Positions 7,258 through 62,064 of a stretch of DNA of 64,000 nt are shown here, one piece after another (within the stretch, counting starts at the first letter, position 1; each line of letters opens with the position of its first letter). The stretch lies in IMG/VR virus record IMGVR_UViG_3300042922_001182, positions 62,001-126,000 of that record. The stretch is one strand, 5' to 3'. Below the pieces are notes generated by a model that did not search any database, had not been told where the DNA came from, and saw only the letters and a program-made list of their open reading frames with translations. The position numbers and the translations under genes are program-made.

Positions 7258-7818
7258 ATGTTCCTCAGCGAGTACCAGAACAGACCCCAAGGTCCCGTCA
7301 GGAGGTCCCTGGCGGACTACCCCACCCTGAGGGAGGCGACCGGTCTGGTAGAGAGGGCCCTACAGGGTGACTTCGACGCCGCCGAGATCGTCCTCACCGA
7401 GGAGGAAAAGGCGAACAGCCTGGCGGAGGCCAAGCGATGGGTCGACGAAGTCCAGGAGTTCGTACGCCAGAAGGACCGCAAGATCCGCAGCGAGTCGGAG
7501 GCCTCCAAGGCCATCGCCTGGATCGGCTCCGGCGTCTACATCTTCGGCCTTCTCATGATGATCGCCGCTCCCCTCAGCCTGGCGATCGGGCTCCTCGGCC
7601 TGCTCGCATCCCTGGTGGGCGTGGTCGTGATGTTCATCAGCGCCGGTAAGGCCGACAACGCCCGCAGGATGTCGATCCAGCTCCGGGAGGAGGGCCGCAA
7701 GCTCCGCCGCATGCGCGACAAGGCCAAGGACCAGAAGCTCAAGGACCAGATCGACGACGTCCTCGACAAGATCGACCAGAACAACGACGAGATCCTGGAC
7801 GCCACCAGGGGAGGTTAA
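7258..7818 (+). CDS. Membrane protein, paralog of 6698..7243
   Basis: Two TM-length hydrophobic helices; shared motifs as above. Confidence 0.75.
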   Translation: MFLSEYQNRPQGPVRRSLADYPTLREATGLVERALQGDFDAAEIVLTEEEKANSLAEAKRWVDEVQEFVRQKDRKIRSESEASKAIAWIGSGVYIFGLLMMIAAPLSLAIGLLGLLASLVGVVVMFISAGKADNARRMSIQLREEGRKLRRMRDKAKDQKLKDQIDDVLDKIDQNNDEILDATRGG

Positions 7819-7820
7819 AC

Positions 7821-8084
7821 GTGAACAGCAAGAGATTCCTCGAACTGGCCGAGGCCGTCGCGCCCGAGAGGGACCGGCAGGTCCTCCTCGAAAGCCGCAC
7901 CCCCTTCGGCACCGGGAGCAAGAGGGAGCTGATGTCCGCCATCGCGACGTTCTCCTCGCTCCCCCTGGAGCACCGGTCCTCCCGCCTCCGGGAGATCGAG
8001 GAGTCCGCCTCGGCCCTCGGCGTGGACCTGGAGAGGTACCACAGCCACCTGTCCATGGAGGTGAACATTGAACGCCAAGCGTAA
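7821..8084 (+). CDS. Hypothetical protein
   Basis: GGAGGT RBS, GTG start, codon bias. Confidence 0.65.
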   Translation: MNSKRFLELAEAVAPERDRQVLLESRTPFGTGSKRELMSAIATFSSLPLEHRSSRLREIEESASALGVDLERYHSHLSMEVNIERQA

Positions 8085-8799
8085 GAAGTACCAGGACCTC
8101 GTCGTCGAGACGATGAAGAGGCTGGACAAGAGCGGCGCCAACGCCAAGAAGTACGCGGAGATGTTCGCCAAGATGGACGACAAGCAGTTCGACTCCTACG
8201 TCAAGGCGTTCGCCAGGGACGAGGACGCGAACTTCTTCATCGAGGTCATCCCGTTCGAGACGGAGCCGACCCTGAAGATGATCGCGGCGACCGCCGAGTG
8301 GCTGGGCGTGCCCCTTGAGGAGTACGTCTTCTTCCGCCACGAGGACCCGGACGGCGACCCCGTGCGGACCTCCGTGAGGGTGCCCGTGGGCTACCTCAAC
8401 CTCAAGCGCCTCCAGCAGATCCTCAGCAAGAAGAACACCATGTCGCTCGACATCGACAAGCGCGACATGCTCGTCAACCAGGTGACCGGCGACGACAAGA
8501 TCGCCCGCATCTCTAACGTCGAGAACTACGCGCTGAGCGTCATGGGGGCCGACGAGGGCCTCAAGGAATTCCTCGGGCCCAGGTCGGACGACGGCCAGAT
8601 GAAGAGGCAGATGTACAGCGACATCTCCACCAAGGGGTACTCGCAGCTCCAGAACCTCTCCAGCAACCCGGAGGACTCGCAGGCCCTCTCCACCGTGGAC
8701 GTCTTCTTCGCGGGAGCGGGGCTCAAGACGGACCTCATCACCAAGGGCATGGCCTTCCCCAGGACCATGCGCAACATGAGCAAGAGAAAGGACGTGTAA
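8068..8799 (+). CDS. RNA polymerase beta subunit C-terminal fragment (probably virion RNAP)
   Basis: VPVGYLNLKRLQQ...ARISNVENYALSVMGA...LKEFLGPRSDD...MY aligns with RpoB VTVGYMYMLKL...RFGEMEVWALEAYGA...LQEMLTVKSDD...MY. The small size and late-operon position fit the virion enzyme. Confidence 0.75.
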   Translation: MNAKRKKYQDLVVETMKRLDKSGANAKKYAEMFAKMDDKQFDSYVKAFARDEDANFFIEVIPFETEPTLKMIAATAEWLGVPLEEYVFFRHEDPDGDPVRTSVRVPVGYLNLKRLQQILSKKNTMSLDIDKRDMLVNQVTGDDKIARISNVENYALSVMGADEGLKEFLGPRSDDGQMKRQMYSDISTKGYSQLQNLSSNPEDSQALSTVDVFFAGAGLKTDLITKGMAFPRTMRNMSKRKDV

Positions 8800-8800
8800 C

Positions 8801-8935
8801 ATGGAAAGCAACGACAAGAAGAAGGACGAGCCCAAGAAGGCCCCCAAGGCCGCCGACGGCCGGGTCCTCATCACCGAGGACGCCACCCTCACGGCGTTCG
8901 GCCTCCAGGACGCCACCACGGCCGCCGTGCAGTAG
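8801..8935 (+). CDS. Small protein, 44 aa (MESNDKKKDEPKK...VLITED...)
   Basis: AAAGGA RBS, GC3 codons; below the ORF-track cutoff. Confidence 0.6.
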   Translation: MESNDKKKDEPKKAPKAADGRVLITEDATLTAFGLQDATTAAVQ

Positions 8936-8948
8936 AGCCGAAGCGAAC

Positions 8949-9001
8949 AAAAAAGACGATCAGCAGCCCCTTACTCCGCCGTTGGAGTAAGGGGCTGCTG
9001 A
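8949..9001. terminator. Perfect 18-bp hairpin with A-run; terminator oriented for the minus strand
   Basis: TCAGCAGCCCCTTACTCC / GGAGTAAGGGGCTGCTGA; A6 at 8949-8954. Confidence 0.65.
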
Positions 9002-9058
9002 CCGGTTAAGACGGAAAGAGAGAAAGAAAGAACGCTCCGAGTGGCTCTCGCAGCATAC

Positions 9059-9070
9059 CATTGTAGTGTT
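9059..9070 (-). promoter_or_regulatory. Late-type promoter AACA-ctacaa-TG facing the 8960-9001 hairpin
   Basis: Reverse-complement match to AACA-N6-TG. Confidence 0.45.
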
Positions 9071-9187
9071 CCTTGACAATTCTCCAGGAAACGTAGAGAA
9101 TGAATCAGATAAGGTCTTGAATGTTGATTGAGATATTCAGCTAAATGTCAAGGAAAATCTTAAAGATTTAGCCATAAAACTGAAAGT

Positions 9188-9199
9188 AACATTGGATTG
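9188..9199 (+). promoter_or_regulatory. Late-type promoter AACA-ttggat-TG
   Basis: Motif match, but in an AT-rich island where chance matches are more likely. Confidence 0.35.
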
Positions 9200-9306
9200 A
9201 ACTTCGTTGAGAAACCTAGAGAGAATGTAATAAGAACCTAAAAAGACCTGGAAACGCGCACGCGAGAGCGCCAACGGGCGCACCGAGAGCAACACGGGAG
9301 GACGAG

Positions 9307-10254
9307 TTGCCTGAGATCACCACCATGTACAACACCTACGCCGCGAGCATCATCAAGTTCCGGCGGAAGCTGGAGCAGATATCGACGAGGCTCGACCAGG
9401 CCATGGATGTCGAGATCAACAAGAGCGTCTTCGAAACCCCGCTGACCGATAGGGCGAAGGAGGTATGTCTAGCCTTTGGCGAAGAAATCAAGGAGACCCT
9501 ATCTCACTACTTCGCCGCCTACCTGGCCCAGGGGGCCAGCCCTTACGTCTACATTTCCTACAACACCTCTACATGCGGGACAAGGATCGTCCTCCCCGAG
9601 TGGTTCCACTCCTTCGAGAACCTGGTGTTCAACAAGGACAAGGGCCTCTGGATGGTGGACGTGAACTGCTTCCCGAAGCCCTTCTTCCTGTCTTCCACCC
9701 GTAAGGACATCCTGGGAATGGGCATCAAGGAGCTGCACGCGCCCCACGCCTTCCAGGAGAATCACAGGGTCTTCACTACCTACGAGGAAGCCTTGAGCTT
9801 CAGTCGGAAGCTAACCGAACAGGCCCTGAAGGATACGGGGAAGGTCATCTGCGACCTCCGGCAGCACGCCTACGTGCTGAGCCTGCTCAGCCCCCTCCGG
9901 ACCTTCAACGAGGCCGAGGTCCTGGTCGATAGGCAGCGGAAACTAAACGAGAAAATCCGGGGCAAACAAGGTCATGTGTGGTTCGTCGACGACAACGGCG
10001 CAGTGTGCGCTGCGTCCTGCAGCCACGTCTCCGTCAACAGGCGCAAGGGCCTGGGTAAGCTCTACTCCTACCGGGTGAATGGCCTGGGCTGGGTGGACGC
10101 CTCCAAGCTCTACTGCGAACAGCACGAGGCTATGCAGGACTTGGTCGGAAGGAAGGCCAAGGAGCTCGAACACCTGGAGATGCAGATCGCTCTCCGGAAG
10201 AGGGAGCTCGACAGCACCAACCCCCCGGACAACGGGTCCCCCGCCGGATCCTAG
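9307..10254 (+). CDS. Hypothetical protein
   Basis: GGGAGG RBS, TTG start, 315-aa ORF. Confidence 0.7.
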   Translation: MPEITTMYNTYAASIIKFRRKLEQISTRLDQAMDVEINKSVFETPLTDRAKEVCLAFGEEIKETLSHYFAAYLAQGASPYVYISYNTSTCGTRIVLPEWFHSFENLVFNKDKGLWMVDVNCFPKPFFLSSTRKDILGMGIKELHAPHAFQENHRVFTTYEEALSFSRKLTEQALKDTGKVICDLRQHAYVLSLLSPLRTFNEAEVLVDRQRKLNEKIRGKQGHVWFVDDNGAVCAASCSHVSVNRRKGLGKLYSYRVNGLGWVDASKLYCEQHEAMQDLVGRKAKELEHLEMQIALRKRELDSTNPPDNGSPAGS

Positions 10255-10278
10255 TCAACAGAAAGGAAAACCTACACC

Positions 10279-11484
10279 ATGCTCATGGGACTTTTCCGCA
10301 AGGAAGCCGCGAAGGAAGCCCTCGGTCGCGAGACGCGTCACCCGACGTACGCCACCGGCTTCCACGGCATGGACTACCGCAACGGCTACATCGACGACCA
10401 GGGCTACGTCCAGGCCGGTCTCGACGGTGGTCGCATCCTGACCCTGGTCGGCAACTCCGGCACGGGTAAGTCGACCTTCGGCATGCAGATCGCCGCCAAC
10501 ATGGTCAAGCCGTTCGAGAACGGCATCATCCTCCACTACGACTTCGAGCGAGCCACCAACAAGGAGCGCTTCCGCAAGATCTCCGGCTGGAGCAAGGCCG
10601 AGGTCGAGGCCAAGTACCAGCACCTCAACACCGAGATCTACGCCGAGACCGTCTTCTCCGCGATCCGCAAGACCGCCGACCTGAAGCTGGCCAACTTCGA
10701 CAAGCTGAAGGTCGCCATCAAGTGGGACGAGAGCGGCAAGGAGATCGAGTGGGGCCTGCCTCCGACCGTCATCTTCGTCGACTCGCTGGCGCTGATGATG
10801 CCCAAGAAGATCACCGAGGAGGAGGAGCTGTCCGGCTCGATGTCGGCCTCGGCCGTCGCCAAGGTGAACACCGCCGTCCTGAAGCGCTGCATGAGCCCCC
10901 TGCAGGACGGCAACATCTTCCTGATCATCATCAACCACATCAACAAGAAGATCGAGATCAACCCGATGATCAAGACGCAGGCCGACGTCAACTACCTGAA
11001 GCAGGACGAGAGCCTGCCGGGCGGCAAGGCGGCGGTCTACCTCGCCAACTACCTCATCAAGCTCGTGGCCTCCAAGAAGCTGAAGAAGGAGGAGGAGCTG
11101 GGCGTGGACGGCTTCCTGGTGACCGGCGAGCTCATCAAGAGCCGCTCGAACGCCGCCGGTAAGACATTCGTGCTGGTCTTCGATCAGGCCAACGGCATGA
11201 ACGCTGACCTGTCGGCCTACGTGGCCCTCAAGGACGCCAAGAAGATCGGCGGCGCCGGTCGCAGCTGGTACCTGGAGAACATGCCCGAGGTCAAGTTCGC
11301 GCAGAAGGACTTCCTGGAGAAGCTGAACAGCGTCCCCGGGATGCGCGACAAGTTCGACGAGCTCTGCTTCAACCACTTCTCGGACATGATCCCCGCCGAG
11401 GACGACTACGAGGACCAGCCCGACCTGTCCTCGTTGCAGGAGCACTTCGAAGAGGGCGACGACGGCGAGATCCCGGACGCCTAG
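10279..11484 (+). CDS. RecA/UvsX-like recombinase
   Basis: Walker A GNSGTGKST, HYDFE, Walker B VIFVDSLA, IIINHI, LPGGKA..Y, IKSR. Confidence 0.85.
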   Translation: MLMGLFRKEAAKEALGRETRHPTYATGFHGMDYRNGYIDDQGYVQAGLDGGRILTLVGNSGTGKSTFGMQIAANMVKPFENGIILHYDFERATNKERFRKISGWSKAEVEAKYQHLNTEIYAETVFSAIRKTADLKLANFDKLKVAIKWDESGKEIEWGLPPTVIFVDSLALMMPKKITEEEELSGSMSASAVAKVNTAVLKRCMSPLQDGNIFLIIINHINKKIEINPMIKTQADVNYLKQDESLPGGKAAVYLANYLIKLVASKKLKKEEELGVDGFLVTGELIKSRSNAAGKTFVLVFDQANGMNADLSAYVALKDAKKIGGAGRSWYLENMPEVKFAQKDFLEKLNSVPGMRDKFDELCFNHFSDMIPAEDDYEDQPDLSSLQEHFEEGDDGEIPDA

Positions 11485-11563: not shown

Positions 11564-11573
11564 CACATATTAT
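11564..11573 (+). promoter_or_regulatory. Early-type motif CACATATTAT
   Basis: Exact copy of 16793 and 35905. Confidence 0.55.
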
Positions 11574-11652: not shown

Positions 11653-13590
11653 TTGCACGACAGGATCGACATCGAGGCCTACCGCAACACCGACCGCTTC
11701 CTTGGGGAGGAGGTCCTCTTCCCCTTCGTGAGGAGCACCGACGGCTCGCGAGAGCTGATGGCCTCGTCCCAGGTCCACCAGGCGCTCGTCCTGACCAACG
11801 GTGAGTTCCCCCGCGTCTTCACCGGGTACGAGAACCAGGTGGGGAAGTACAGCTCCGCCTACCTCCGCGCCGAGCAGGAGCTCAAGATTCTCGAAGTCAT
11901 CGGGAAGAACCCGTACAACGCGCTCATCGTCTACGAGGACGAGGAGGGGACCATCGGCGTCATCTGGCGGAAGGAGTGCGAGAGCCTCTCCGAGCACTTC
12001 GGCTACCAGTACGACAACACCTACTTGGACGGGAAGTGGGAGGGCGACACGATCGCCAAGGGGGACGTCATCCGGCGGGGGACCGCCTACGACGAGGAGA
12101 TGAACTTCTCCTTCGGAACCAACCTCAGGGCGGTCTACATCCCCTGGGACGGAATGACCTTCGAGGACGCTATCGTCATCAGCGAGAGCACGTCCAAGAA
12201 GCTTGAGACCTCCTTGGTGGAGGTCGTCACGATCAACATGAACACCAACGACCTGGCCCTCAACCTCTACGGGGACGAGGATCCCAGCGGCTACAAGTCG
12301 TTCCCCGACATCGGCGAGGAGGTCAAGAACGGCATCCTCATGGCCCGTCGCCGCATCAACTACGAGTCCGCCCTTGTGGACCTGAGCACCAACCTCCTGA
12401 CCCAGGTCAACCCCAGTCGGGACACGGTGTTCTACTGCAACGGCACCGTGGTGGACATCGAGATCTTCAACAACGACGACGTCAACCGCCTGGAGAAGTA
12501 CGACTACAACGCCCAGATGCTCAAGTACCTGGCCGTGAACATGGAGTTCTACCGCGACGTGGACAGGGTCCTCGGCGCGTACATCAACGGCGGTCGCTCC
12601 TACACGGAGGACGCCGCCGCCGCCTACCGCCGCGCCCGGGACATCTGCAAGGATGGCGAGGAGCGCATCCGCTGGCGGCAGAACAAGAACGACTTCGAGT
12701 CCTACGTCATCCGGTTCACCCTGCTGCACAAGACCACGGCCAAGCCCGGGTCGAAGCTGGCGAACCGCTACGGCGGCAAGGGCGTCATCTCGCTCATCCT
12801 CCCCGACGACCAGATGCCGGTCAACGAGCACGGCGAGCGGGCCGAGATCATCCTCAGCCCTCTTGGCGTCACCAACCGCCTCAACCCGTCCCAGCTGATC
12901 GAGCAGGAGCTCAACTTCGTGGCGGACCACATCATGCGGGAGGCCAGGAAGGCGCCCGACACCATGACGGCGTGGGGTCTAATCCAGGACCTGCTCATCC
13001 AGGTCAGCCCCACCCAGGCGTCGGCCATGGCCAGCCACCTGTACAAGGAGGACATGGAGAGCTTCGTCAAGTCCATCCTGGACGACAAGCTCTACATCCA
13101 CCAGGCGCCGTTCTGGGGGAACCTGGACCTCGGCGGCCTGATCGAGCTGTACACCAAATACCCGTGGATCAAGCCCTACAAGATGAGCTGCTCCGAGAAG
13201 CCGCTGATCATGGGCGACATCTACTTCATGCTCCTGAAGCACGAGCCGATGACGAAGTTCTCGGTTCGCTCCACCAGCACCGTGAGCAACCGTGGCACCC
13301 CCTCCAAGAGCAGCCGCTACAAGGAGCACCAGCAGCCGTTCAGCCACACGCCGATCAAGATCGGCGAGATGGAGACCTTCAACATGTTCGCCACCGGCAA
13401 CTTCGAGGAGGTCCTCCGCATGCTCAACCTCTACTCCTCCAACCCGGGGGACAGAGAGCACCTCGCAAATGTTCTCCTCAAGACGAACATCTTCGACAGC
13501 AAGCAGGTAGATTCGCTCGGCGGCGAATCCAGCGTCAAGTCTATCATGGACGTACTGCTCACCAGCGCCGGTCTCCGGCTTACCGATTAG
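11653..13590 (+). CDS. RNA polymerase beta subunit, C-terminal half (probably non-virion RNAP)
   Basis: DGSRELMASSQVHQA, GMTFEDAIVISE, GSKLANRYGGKGVIS, IILSPLGVTNRLNPSQL, IKIGEME. The TTG11653 start is preferred (AAGGAAGG RBS) because ATG11572 lies inside the promoter motif. Confidence 0.9.
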   Translation: MHDRIDIEAYRNTDRFLGEEVLFPFVRSTDGSRELMASSQVHQALVLTNGEFPRVFTGYENQVGKYSSAYLRAEQELKILEVIGKNPYNALIVYEDEEGTIGVIWRKECESLSEHFGYQYDNTYLDGKWEGDTIAKGDVIRRGTAYDEEMNFSFGTNLRAVYIPWDGMTFEDAIVISESTSKKLETSLVEVVTINMNTNDLALNLYGDEDPSGYKSFPDIGEEVKNGILMARRRINYESALVDLSTNLLTQVNPSRDTVFYCNGTVVDIEIFNNDDVNRLEKYDYNAQMLKYLAVNMEFYRDVDRVLGAYINGGRSYTEDAAAAYRRARDICKDGEERIRWRQNKNDFESYVIRFTLLHKTTAKPGSKLANRYGGKGVISLILPDDQMPVNEHGERAEIILSPLGVTNRLNPSQLIEQELNFVADHIMREARKAPDTMTAWGLIQDLLIQVSPTQASAMASHLYKEDMESFVKSILDDKLYIHQAPFWGNLDLGGLIELYTKYPWIKPYKMSCSEKPLIMGDIYFMLLKHEPMTKFSVRSTSTVSNRGTPSKSSRYKEHQQPFSHTPIKIGEMETFNMFATGNFEEVLRMLNLYSSNPGDREHLANVLLKTNIFDSKQVDSLGGESSVKSIMDVLLTSAGLRLTD

Positions 13591-13603
13591 GAAAGAGAGA
13601 AAA

Positions 13604-14614
13604 ATGACCAAGAAGGCCTTCACCACCGTATTCCTCCCCGTCCGTCCCACGCTGGACGCGGCGGTCGCCTCGTACATCCTTTCCACCGAGCTGGCCGCCA
13701 CCGTCTGCAAGATGGTCGTCGTGCCCATCGGCAGCCCGCCGTTCGACCTGACGGACGGCCAGGCCTCTTTCCAGATCGTCAGCAGCAACCGTCGCGGCGA
13801 CTCGATGAAGTTCGTCCACCCCAAGGAGGGCGGCTCCGGCACCATGACCGAGAACGTCCTGGAGCTCCTGGACAAGGAGTCCCGGGCCAAGTACGCCCGG
13901 GTGACCAAGCTCGTCACCGAGGCGGCCCGAAAGCAGCGCGGCGGCGAGAGCCTGGCGACCATCGCGGCCCTCTATGACGCGATGACCGTCTACGGCTCGC
14001 CCGGGGAGGACACCTACGAGGTCATCACCCGCTTCTGGTCCATCCTGGGCTCCTTCGTCCAGGGCGAGGTGCGCCGCATGAAGGCCGAGAAGGACCTGAT
14101 CTCGAAGGTCGTCGATCGCCGGGAGACCGTCAAGTACAAGGGCGCGAACATCCGCATCGCCCGCATCTCCAAGCAGATCAACAACCGCGAGCTCGGCGCC
14201 ATCCTGTCGAAGTTCGACATGGTGGTCTACCAGGTTCGCAACGTCGCCCACGCCCTCAACAGCTACAACAAGGCCCCGGTGAAGGTGTCCATGAAGGACA
14301 TCGCCTCCAAGAAGCCGAACAGCGGTTGGTTCGTGAACGACCACGACACGATGATCAAGACCGAGGGCACCAAGACCAGCGTCTCCGAGCTCTTCGACCA
14401 CGTCATCCTGTCGCTCGGCGGCACCGTGAAGCGCAAGGAGAGGCAGGCCCCGGAGCCGAAGGTCATCGCCGTCGAGGAGATCACCCTCAGCCTCGAACCG
14501 ACCGACGACGTTTCCTTCAAGGCGTCCTCGGTCGTCGTGGAGGGTGAGCTCGTGGTGAAGGGCGACGTGACCGTCACCGCCCCGACCATCGACCTCCAGC
14601 CCACCGAGGCCTAG
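13604..14614 (+). CDS. Hypothetical protein
   Basis: Purine-rich RBS, strong codon bias. Confidence 0.75.
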   Translation: MTKKAFTTVFLPVRPTLDAAVASYILSTELAATVCKMVVVPIGSPPFDLTDGQASFQIVSSNRRGDSMKFVHPKEGGSGTMTENVLELLDKESRAKYARVTKLVTEAARKQRGGESLATIAALYDAMTVYGSPGEDTYEVITRFWSILGSFVQGEVRRMKAEKDLISKVVDRRETVKYKGANIRIARISKQINNRELGAILSKFDMVVYQVRNVAHALNSYNKAPVKVSMKDIASKKPNSGWFVNDHDTMIKTEGTKTSVSELFDHVILSLGGTVKRKERQAPEPKVIAVEEITLSLEPTDDVSFKASSVVVEGELVVKGDVTVTAPTIDLQPTEA

Positions 14615-16792: not shown

Positions 16793-16802
16793 CACATATT
16801 AT
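16793..16802 (+). promoter_or_regulatory. Early-type motif CACATATTAT overlapping hairpin 16799-16832
   Basis: Exact motif; TTATCCGAAAGACGC / GCGTCTTTCGGATAA inverted repeat. Confidence 0.55.
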
Positions 16803-16864
16803 CCGAAAGACGCGTGTGCGTCTTTCGGATAACTAACTTTTCTCTCTCGAAAGGAGATACGCGG

Positions 16865-30321: not shown

Positions 30322-30395
30322 GCCTTCGTAGCTCAGCTGGACAGAGCGGGTCCGTCCTAAGGACAAGGTCGGGGGTTCGAATCCCTCCGGGGGCG
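30322..30395 (+). tRNA. tRNA-Arg (anticodon CCT), CCA not encoded
   Basis: Acceptor GCCTTCG/CGGGGGC, D-arm GCTC/GAGC, anticodon loop GT-CCT-AA, T-loop GGTTCGAATCC. Confidence 0.88.
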
Positions 30396-30438
30396 CTCGC
30401 CGAAAGGCGCTAACGGCAAAGAGAAGGAGAGAAGCAAC

Positions 30439-62043: not shown

Positions 62044-62064
62044 TTTCTCTCTTTCCTTCCTGTG

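What the first reader, a model, noticed from the sequence alone, without database searches (positions are those of the whole stretch)
8948..9070. Candidate ~110-nt late antisense sRNA carrying an anti-RBS sequence
Seen: a minus-strand late promoter (9059-9070) faces an 18-bp hairpin plus T6 (8949-9001), defining a compact unit with only a 16-codon ORF. The transcript contains UUUCUCUCUUUCC (9013-9025), the exact 13-nt complement of the leader GGAAAGAGAGAAA just before the starts of genes 13604 (13590-13602) and 62043 (62044-62056). There are also 9-nt matches before 43306 and 62838. Inference: a trans-acting sRNA that occludes a class of phage or host ribosome-binding sites late in infection. 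Caveat: polypurine leaders are low-complexity and common here.
Basis: partly seen in the sequence, partly recalled or inferred. Interest (0 to 1): 0.65.

Follow-up and report, generated by a model that had tools for sequence, protein, structure and literature searches.

The report
Candidate late small RNA in jumbo phage
A gene-free gap in an uncultured soil jumbo phage holds a phage-type late promoter facing a very strong terminator, which probably makes a ~110-base non-coding RNA with an exposed C/U-rich stretch, but its match to particular ribosome-binding sites is no better than any C/U-rich stretch would give.

Summary
The sequence features are all present at the stated coordinates. The window belongs to a 239-kb, 63.5% GC soil-metagenome jumbo phage with AR9/PBS1-like multisubunit RNA polymerases. 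It uses the AR9 promoter grammar: early CACATATTAT-N6-G and late AACA-N6-T-A/G.

The minus-strand site at 9070-9059 fits the late consensus, which puts the start at G9059. About 110 nt downstream lies the longest hairpin among those between co-directional genes. Its U-tail is on the minus strand only. This is the one clean gene-free late-promoter-to-terminator pair in the genome. A correctly placed motif by chance has P of about 0.03.

The predicted RNA has a 5' stem-loop, a 24-nt unpaired C/U tract, a 21-bp terminator and U6.

The anti-RBS specificity is weak. Exact 12-13-mers beat composition-matched shuffles only modestly (P 0.007-0.024). Duplex energies against all 277 start regions do not beat them (P 0.08-0.42). 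Predicted targets show no temporal or functional coherence.

No RNA data, close relative or Rfam family exists. I estimate about 0.6 that a discrete late minus-strand RNA is made and about 0.25 that it acts as a trans anti-RBS regulator.

The parts
9059..9070 (-). AR9-type late (non-virion RNA polymerase) promoter motif AACA-N6-TG. The predicted transcription start is G at 9059.
   Evidence: Sequence. Consensus and start rule come from PMC5312081. There are 32 well-placed sites of the same motif in this genome. The core score is above the median of those sites and is exceeded by 2% of coding-region hits. Chance placement has P = 0.027.
9029..9059 (-). Predicted 5' stem-loop of the RNA, beginning at +1. 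It has 11 pairs, two of them G.U.
   Evidence: Folds. The energy is -12.5 kcal/mol on the minus strand against -8.6 for the same interval on the plus strand.
9005..9028 (-). Unpaired 24-nt linker. The 20-nt homopyrimidine run spans 9032-9013, which is the homopurine tract on the plus strand and includes the 13-mer at 9013-9025.
   Evidence: Unpaired probability is above 0.9 at every position. It is the third-longest homopurine run of the genome and lies 274 nt from the next start codon.
8957..9004 (-). Terminator hairpin, 21 bp in the minus-strand RNA with a 6-nt loop.
   Evidence: It is the longest of 73 hairpins in gaps between co-directional genes. The energy is -44.2 kcal/mol on the minus strand against -40.7 on the plus strand.
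8946..8956 (-). U-rich terminator tail, with U6 at 8955-8950.
   Evidence: It is one of only 2 of 73 such hairpins with a T-tail on the strand opposite the flanking genes, and the only one with 7 of 8 T.
9006..9056 (-). 16-codon ORF (MLREPLGAFFLSLFPS) inside the unit. It is probably not translated.
   Evidence: GC at third codon positions is 0.5, against about 0.95 in real genes. There is no purine-rich leader and only 3 nt precede the ATG.
9052..9079 (-). Sigma-70-like promoter match (TTGTCA, 16 nt, TG-n-TATGCT) overlapping the late motif. It is a possible second, host-type promoter.
   Evidence: 9 of 12 matches. This is a consensus match only.
9073..9101 (+). Sigma-70-like plus-strand promoter match (TTGACA, 17 nt, GAGAAT) at the edge of the AT-rich block. 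It is context and not part of the RNA.
   Evidence: 10 of 12 matches.
9188..9199 (+). Plus-strand late motif AACATTGGATTG. It probably drives gene 9307-10254, which would make this gap a divergent late-promoter region.
   Evidence: It lies 119 nt upstream of the start codon.

Best explanation
The gap 8936-9306 holds a self-contained minus-strand transcription unit. An AR9-type late promoter starts transcription at G9059, and a strong intrinsic terminator stops it at about 8950. The product is a non-coding RNA of about 110 nt with a 5' stem-loop, a 24-nt single-stranded C/U tract and a 21-bp terminator hairpin with a U6 tail.

Its most likely working part is the C/U tract. The tract carries tandem UCUUUC-type repeats like the distal 3' tail of 16S rRNA. 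It can therefore pair with the AGAAAG-type purine leaders that precede many phage genes.

I read this as broad, low-specificity pairing with purine-rich start regions, not as a switch for the genes at 13604 and 62043. The RNA would also pair with the fully complementary plus-strand read-through RNA.

Shown here: the motifs, their placement and the fold statistics. Inferred: transcription, late timing (by analogy with AR9) and any effect on translation.
For: - Polymerase and promoter grammar. The phage encodes AR9/PBS1-like RNA polymerase beta pieces. It uses the AR9 grammar: early CACATATTAT-N6-G at about 28 sites, almost all in gaps and facing genes, and late AACA-N6-T-A/G (PMC5312081).
- Motif enrichment. 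Sense-strand late motifs in co-directional gaps number 26 against 2.8 expected.
- Quality of site 9070(-). Its core score is above the median of true sites and is exceeded by 2% of coding hits.
- Placement. A chance motif within 60-200 nt of the hairpin has P = 0.027.
- Terminator. The hairpin is the longest of 73 in co-directional gaps and the only one with 7 of 8 T on the antisense side. Terminators in this phage and in a relative normally carry T-tails facing the right way.
- Uniqueness. It is the only clean gene-free late-promoter-to-terminator pair genome-wide.
- Fold. The z-score is -6.8 and the C/U tract is unpaired at above 0.9.
- Strand asymmetry. The minus RNA is 6.8 kcal/mol more stable than the plus RNA because three G.U pairs become A.C mismatches.
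- Complementarity. The tract matches leaders at 12-13 nt more often than its own shuffles (P 0.0075 and 0.024).
- Leader consensus. It is AGAAAGGAGG, so a UCUUUC-rich RNA is complementary to its distal half.
- Precedent. Late antisense RNAs and antisense-oriented terminators are documented in AR9, phiKZ and other virulent phages.
Against: - No RNA evidence exists. The only run holding this DNA is a soil DNA metagenome.
- No relative is close enough to test conservation or covariation. RNA polymerase beta reaches at most 47% identity, and the neighbouring gene is an orphan.
- Antisense late motifs in co-directional gaps occur at the chance rate genome-wide, 2 against 1.26 expected.
- 59 of 73 inter-gene hairpins have no T-tail at all, so this hairpin could be one of those with a chance A-run beside it.
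- Pairing energies to the 277 start regions are not better than for shuffled C/U linkers.
- Targets lack any temporal or functional coherence.
- The flanks upstream of AACA are less GC-rich than at typical late promoters. The full-length score falls in the lowest 12.5% of true sites.
Confidence: 0.4

Rival explanations
1. No minus-strand RNA is made. The hairpin is one of the many tail-less hairpins between co-directional genes and acts on the plus-strand mRNA, for example as a 3'-end or processing barrier after the operon that ends at 8935. The purine tract after it is a ribosome-binding-site-like element of the plus RNA. It could be an orphan leader or a hairpin-plus-SD stabiliser for the downstream message. 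The A-run and the AACA motif are chance.
For: - 59 of 73 hairpins in co-directional gaps lack T-tails on both strands.
- Antisense late motifs occur at the chance rate genome-wide.
- The tract is as leader-like as real leaders. It has 2 partners at 13 nt or more, as 3 of 277 leaders do. It has 15 partners at 9 nt or more, near the 90th-95th percentile of leaders.
- No plus-strand terminator follows gene 8801-8935, so plus read-through across the element is likely.
Against: - The joint occurrence of a 7-of-8 T-tail on the minus side and a correctly spaced late motif is unlikely (P about 0.03 for the motif alone).
- Three G.U pairs favour the minus RNA.
- The only start codon at a usable distance after the tract opens an 11-codon frame rich in A/T at third codon positions (my reading).
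- The tract lies 274 nt from gene 9307.
Confidence: 0.25
2. The RNA is made but works only in cis. It is a short late antisense transcript convergent with the early operon. It could pair with plus read-through RNA over 8950-9059, giving double-strand cleavage or interference. Alternatively it is a by-product that the strong terminator insulates from the polymerase-subunit genes upstream. In this view the C/U tract has no trans role.
For: - The RNA is perfectly complementary to any plus read-through transcript.
- The upstream operon has no plus terminator.
- AR9 has seven late promoters that drive antisense RNA, and antisense RNAs are detected for about a dozen of its genes, mostly late in infection.
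- In Pseudomonas phages, 9% of terminators are antisense-oriented, and an antisense promoter has been proposed to block read-through.
- There is no target specificity in trans.
Against: - It does not explain a 20-nt homopyrimidine run kept unpaired between two stems, the third-longest such run in the genome.
- The RNA stops 15 nt short of the upstream coding region, so it overlaps no gene.
Confidence: 0.2
3. The features are chiefly DNA-level signals of a regulatory or replication-related AT-rich region. The purine tract, repeats and palindrome would be protein-binding or structural DNA elements shared with a second such region 110 kb away.
For: - The gap 8936-9306 and the gap at window-equivalent 119402-119817 (genome 181402-181817) are the two long gaps with 46% GC.
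- They share GAAAGAGAGAAAG, ACCTAGAG and ACCTGGAAA.
- They hold the only two CTTAAAG-centred 15-bp palindromes in the genome.
- Shared 8-mers number 19 against 4.6 expected (P = 0.0025).
Against: - The shared motifs other than the purine 13-mer lie outside the 8950-9059 unit.
- Their order differs between the two regions.
- Nothing identifies a binding protein or an origin.
- This does not explain the oriented U-tail.
Confidence: 0.1
4. The unit encodes a 16-residue hydrophobic peptide translated from a nearly leaderless mRNA.
For: An ATG lies 3 nt after the predicted start, and the ORF ends just before the terminator.
Against: - GC at third codon positions is 0.5, against about 0.95 in genes of this phage, including its 36-47-residue ones.
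- There is no ribosome-binding site.
- The 3-nt leader is neither leaderless nor SD-led.
- The ATG lies inside the predicted 5' stem.
Confidence: 0.03

Closest known systems
Late antisense transcripts of Bacillus phage AR9 (Lavysh et al. 2017, PMC5312081)
   Same: Both have the same polymerase lineage and the same late promoter consensus, AACA-N6-T-A/G, with the last base as the start. In AR9, seven late promoters drive antisense transcription, mostly late in infection.
   Different: The AR9 antisense RNAs overlap genes, and no function or discrete small RNA with its own terminator is described. Here the unit is intergenic, 110 nt long, terminator-bounded and carries a C/U tract. This phage has 63.5% GC and only 42% identity to PBS1/AR9 in RNA polymerase beta.
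Antisense and non-coding RNAs of virulent Pseudomonas phages (phiKZ, PAK_P3; PMC10914365)
   Same: They are phage-made small or antisense RNAs with defined starts, some abundant late in infection. Antisense-oriented terminators make up 9% of phage terminators there.
   Different: Those RNAs are experimentally detected, and many derive from UTR processing. Their sequences and promoters are unrelated. None is described as an anti-Shine-Dalgarno RNA.
c4 antisense RNA of phages P1/P7
   Same: It is a phage-encoded RNA that blocks translation by pairing around a ribosome-binding site through exposed complementary segments (review PMC12197685).
   Different: c4 has one specific target (ant) with defined complementary boxes and works in lysogeny and immunity. 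Here no specific target stands out.
Lambda OOP RNA
   Same: It is a short phage RNA with its own promoter and terminator, transcribed against the flow of the neighbouring operon.
   Different: OOP overlaps the 3' end of cII and acts in cis on it. This RNA overlaps no coding region.
C/U-rich seed sRNAs of Gram-positive bacteria (RsaE/RoxS type; from my own knowledge, not tested here)
   Same: They have an unpaired pyrimidine-rich seed between stem-loops that pairs with Shine-Dalgarno regions of many mRNAs.
   Different: Those seeds are short conserved C-rich motifs with validated regulons. There is no sequence similarity, and no Rfam family matches this locus.

Membership tests
AR9-type late (non-virion RNA polymerase) promoter | AACA, six bases, then T followed by A or G, with the last base as the start site | tested here: met
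   Minus strand 9070-9059 reads AACACTACAATG. The rule comes from PMC5312081.
AR9-type late (non-virion RNA polymerase) promoter | The motif is actually used by this phage, shown by enrichment upstream of genes | tested here: met
   32 sites lie 20-85 nt upstream of starts. There are 26 sense hits against 2.8 expected in co-directional gaps.
AR9-type late (non-virion RNA polymerase) promoter | The phage encodes the matching multisubunit polymerase | tested here: met
   Beta-subunit pieces lie at 8068-8799 and 11653-13590. The best database relatives are PBS1/AR9 at 42% identity.
AR9-type late (non-virion RNA polymerase) promoter | A mapped transcription start and late timing | not testable with these tools
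   No RNA run holds this DNA.
Intrinsic (Rho-independent) terminator | GC-rich stem, short loop, then a U-run on the transcribed strand | tested here: met
   On the minus strand there are 21 bp, a 6-nt loop and 7 of 8 T after the stem. On the plus strand the feature is not met, with 2 of 8 T.
Trans-acting base-pairing small RNA (anti-Shine-Dalgarno type) | Own promoter and terminator, with no coding potential | tested here: met
   Searches cover the unit. The 16-codon ORF has non-genic codon usage. This is prediction only.
Trans-acting base-pairing small RNA (anti-Shine-Dalgarno type) | Accessible single-stranded seed | tested here: met
   24 nt have unpaired probability above 0.9.
Trans-acting base-pairing small RNA (anti-Shine-Dalgarno type) | Seed-target complementarity beyond composition-matched chance, and a coherent target set | tested here: inconclusive
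   Exact 12-13-mers give P 0.0075-0.024, while 9-11-mers give P 0.06-0.10. Energies give P 0.08-0.42. There is no class enrichment.
Trans-acting base-pairing small RNA (anti-Shine-Dalgarno type) | Conservation or covariation of seed and stems in relatives | not testable with these tools
   No relative is above 47% identity in a core protein, and there is no DNA match.
Any curated RNA family (Rfam 15) | Match reaching the family's gathering score | tested here: not met
   The best hits score 12-17 bits against thresholds of 65-200.
Small protein gene | Ribosome-binding site and genome-typical codon usage | tested here: not met
   There is no purine leader. GC at third codon positions is 0.5 against about 0.95.

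The most novel reading that the evidence does not exclude
The phage makes, late in infection, a mimic of the 3' tail of 16S rRNA. This would be an abundant RNA whose tandem UCUUUC repeats compete with ribosomes for the distal AGAAAG half of extended Shine-Dalgarno leaders. It would globally re-weight translation of phage and host messages instead of switching single genes. My results do not exclude this, because pairing is broad (111 of 277 start regions at -15 kcal/mol or better) and non-specific.
Probability: 0.1. Interest if true: 0.75.

Novelty: new member of a known kind. Interest (0 to 1): 0.4.

Why it matters
If the RNA is real, it would be a dedicated small-RNA gene with its own promoter and terminator in an AR9-like jumbo phage. 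In that group only gene-overlapping antisense RNAs of unknown role have been reported. It would also give a concrete handle on translation control late in jumbo-phage infection.

A by-product does not depend on the RNA. A 63.5% GC soil phage with only 42% identity to PBS1/AR9 in RNA polymerase beta keeps both AR9 promoter consensus sequences almost letter for letter. That allows temporal classes to be read directly from uncultured relatives.

The practical limit is severe. There is no host, no isolate, no RNA data and no close relative.

Tried and rejected
- RNA evidence. The single search for sequencing runs found one soil DNA run and no RNA. Laying that run only confirmed the sequence (001 letters, within the operators' limit).
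- Conservation. Near and distant DNA searches of phage records found nothing. Three scans of viral contigs with flanking proteins found nothing. The downstream gene is an orphan. The best RNA polymerase beta relative has 47% identity. Its contig L001 keeps partial gene order but lacks the orphan gene and this gap.
- Rfam. No family matched.
- A family of such units in the genome. Only one other gene-free pair exists, 119766(-) to 119559. Its 'promoter' is the reverse complement of an early promoter and its terminator is weak. An apparent orphan late promoter at 132917(-) turned out to drive a 77-residue gene that my caller had missed.
- 5' stem-loops as a hallmark of late transcripts. Only 19% of well-placed late sites have one, so this says nothing about the start site.
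- Temporal or functional coherence of predicted targets. None was found.
- No other genetic code was used.

Full report
**What the window is.** The window is bases 62001-126000 of a single 238,984-bp contig with 63.5% GC. The only public run holding it is a soil DNA metagenome. An independent assembly of that run spans 7500-10500 with no difference. Real genes have about 95% GC at third codon positions. I used this to genes with my own script. The phage encodes split RNA polymerase beta pieces at 8068-8799 and 11653-13590. Their nearest database relatives are Bacillus phages PBS1 and AR9 at 42% identity. It also carries a UvsX-like recombinase, a ligase, and tail sheath and virion proteins on the minus strand at 57772-64835. 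It is therefore an uncultured AR9-like jumbo phage.

**The observation.**
- The finding sits in a 371-nt gene-free gap, 8936-9306, with 46% GC. The gap lies between plus-strand genes 8801-8935 and 9307-10254.
- Minus strand 9070-9059 reads AACACTACAATG.
- The hairpin is 8957-9004, and the minus-strand T6 is 8955-8950.
- The purine 13-mer at 9013-9025 occurs three times in the genome. The other two copies abut the start codons at 13604(+) and 62043(-).
A G.U pair there is an A.C mismatch in the plus RNA.

**Promoter grammar.** Two motifs occur almost only in gaps and face genes.
- The first is nnnTCnnnCACATATTAT-N6-G, at about 28 sites.
- The second is AACA-N6-T-A/G. It has 32 sites 20-85 nt upstream of start codons, most of them at 36-56 nt.
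- These are the published AR9 early (AAATATATATTAT-N6-G) and late (AACA-N6-TA/G, last base the start) consensus sequences (PMC5312081).
- In gaps between co-directional genes the late motif occurs 26 times in sense orientation against 2.8 expected. The phage clearly uses it.
- The site at 9070(-) therefore predicts a start at G9059.
- Its spacer and +1 positions score above the median of the 32 well-placed sites. Only 2% of coding-region hits do as well. Its flanks are atypically AT-rich, which puts the full score in the lowest eighth of true sites.
- A caution applies. Antisense hits in co-directional gaps number 2 against 1.26 expected. The motif alone is therefore not evidence. What counts is its placement, since only 2.7% of shuffles of this gap put a motif 60-200 nt upstream of the hairpin on the minus strand.

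**Terminator orientation.** Terminators in this phage and in its nearest relative are ordinary hairpins with T-tails that follow the gene they terminate. Of 73 strong hairpins between co-directional genes:
- 59 have no T-tail on either strand;
- 12 have one in sense orientation;
- 2 have one in antisense orientation.

Of those two, this hairpin is the longest of all 73 and the only one with 7 of 8 T. A genome-wide scan for late or early motifs followed within 40-300 nt by a terminator, with no gene between, returns this unit. It also returns one weak case elsewhere.

**The RNA.** From 9059 to about 8950 the minus strand folds at -56.7 kcal/mol, with z = -6.8 against shuffles. The fold has a 5' stem-loop (9059-9029), a 24-nt stretch with unpaired probability above 0.9 (9028-9005), the terminator and U6. 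The same interval on the plus strand is 6.8 kcal/mol weaker. The 16-codon ORF has non-genic codon usage and no ribosome-binding site. No Rfam family matches.

**Is it an anti-RBS RNA?** The leader consensus of this phage is AGAAAGGAGG. That is the complement of a 16S 3' tail ending CCUCCUUUCU (the tail sequence is my own knowledge). The tract's complement is as leader-like as the most typical leaders. It shares 9 nt or more with 15 leaders and 13 nt with 2. Among real leaders, 32 of 277 share 13 nt or more with another leader, and 3 share that with two others.
- Against shuffles of the 20-nt tract itself, 12-mers and 13-mers give P = 0.0075 and 0.024. The 9-11-mers give only P = 0.06-0.10.
- Duplex energies of the linker against all 277 start regions are not better than for shuffled linkers (P 0.08-0.42).
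- 111 regions reach -15 kcal/mol or better, and the two named genes rank 5th and 14th.
- The two named genes are unrelated proteins of unknown function. One lies in an early operon behind the polymerase gene and the other in the late structural cluster.
- Predicted pairing shows no enrichment in early-reachable or late-only genes.

The C/U tract is a striking feature, since it is the third-longest homopurine/homopyrimidine run in the genome. Its pairing, however, is generic.

**Context.**
- The gap looks like a divergent late-promoter region. It has 9070(-) and 9188(+), about 118 nt apart, across an AT-rich block.
- That block holds sigma-70-like matches and a 15-bp palindrome.
- A second 46% GC gap, at genome 181402-181817, shares several words with this one. 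It also holds the only other CTTAAAG-centred palindrome in the genome.
- This link is unexplained and lies mostly outside the RNA unit.

**What could not be tested.** Expression could not be tested, because no RNA run holds this DNA. Conservation could not be tested either. There is no DNA match, the neighbouring gene is an orphan, and the best core-protein relative reaches 47% identity.

**Synthesis.**
- A discrete late minus-strand RNA is more likely than not. I put it at about 0.6. This rests on the conjunction of a correctly placed, good-quality late motif, the only strongly antisense-tailed hairpin and the strand asymmetry.
- The C/U tract as its working part, pairing broadly with purine leaders, is the mechanism that best explains the tract. 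I put the trans anti-RBS role at about 0.25-0.3.
- Specific control of the genes at 13604 and 62043 is not supported.
- Rivals are a plus-strand mRNA element with chance minus-strand signals (0.25), a purely cis antisense or insulated by-product (0.2), a DNA-level regulatory region (0.1) and a micropeptide (0.03).

**Comparison with known systems.**
- Late antisense transcription from AACA-type promoters is documented in AR9.
- Antisense RNAs, late non-coding RNAs and antisense-oriented terminators are documented in phiKZ and other virulent phages.
- Phage RNAs that occlude a ribosome-binding site are known, for example P1/P7 c4. Short convergent phage RNAs are also known, for example lambda OOP.
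- This candidate would be a new member of that kind, not a new kind.

Noticed in passing
window 1462, 11564, 16793, 25900, 31798, 35905 and about 20 more sites in the genome: An AR9-like early promoter motif, nnnTCnnnCACATATTAT-N6-G, is conserved almost letter for letter in this 63.5% GC phage. Nearly all copies are on the plus strand, in gaps, and face genes.
   Followed up: partly
window 16793-16832; also genome positions equivalent to window -3888, 148019 and 159941: Early promoters are fused to hairpins. At 16793 the predicted start falls inside the 5' arm of a 15-bp hairpin with a T-tail, so the terminator can form only in read-through RNA from upstream. At -3888 the hairpin begins exactly at +1.
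   Followed up: partly
window 9155-9169 and genome 181679-181693 (window-equivalent 119679-119693): The heptamer CTTAAAG occurs only twice in 239 kb. Each copy is the centre of a perfect 15-bp palindrome, and each lies in one of the two long 46% GC gaps. Those gaps also share GAAAGAGAGAAAG, ACCTAGAG and ACCTGGAAA (19 shared 8-mers against 4.6 expected). These could be sites for a common DNA-binding factor.
   Followed up: partly
window 9073-9101 and about 9197-9226 (+): The AT-rich block holds two similar sigma-70-like promoter matches: TTGACA, 17 nt, GAGAAT and TTGAAC, 18 nt, GAGAAT. This is odd for a phage that carries its own polymerases. Only the first was scored by a tool.
   Followed up: no
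whole genome, gaps between co-directional genes: 59 of 73 strong hairpins between co-directional genes have no T-run on either side. Many sit just upstream of late AACA motifs. Their role is open (processing, stability or promoter context).
   Followed up: no
genome 194623-194856 (window-equivalent about 132623-132856, minus strand): A 77-residue gene behind late promoter 132917(-) was missed by my gene caller. It shows that apparently orphan late motifs can mark small unannotated genes.
   Followed up: partly
window 8068-8799 and 11653-13590: RNA polymerase beta is split into separate genes in different operons, as in AR9 and phiKZ. The second piece has its own early promoter at 11564.
   Followed up: partly
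window 30322-30396: There is a tRNA-Arg gene (anticodon CCT) on the plus strand.
   Followed up: no
L001:8876-9213: In the nearest relative (47% identity in polymerase beta) there is a 338-nt gene-free stretch between the recombinase-like gene and the next gene. I did not examine it for structured RNA.
   Followed up: no
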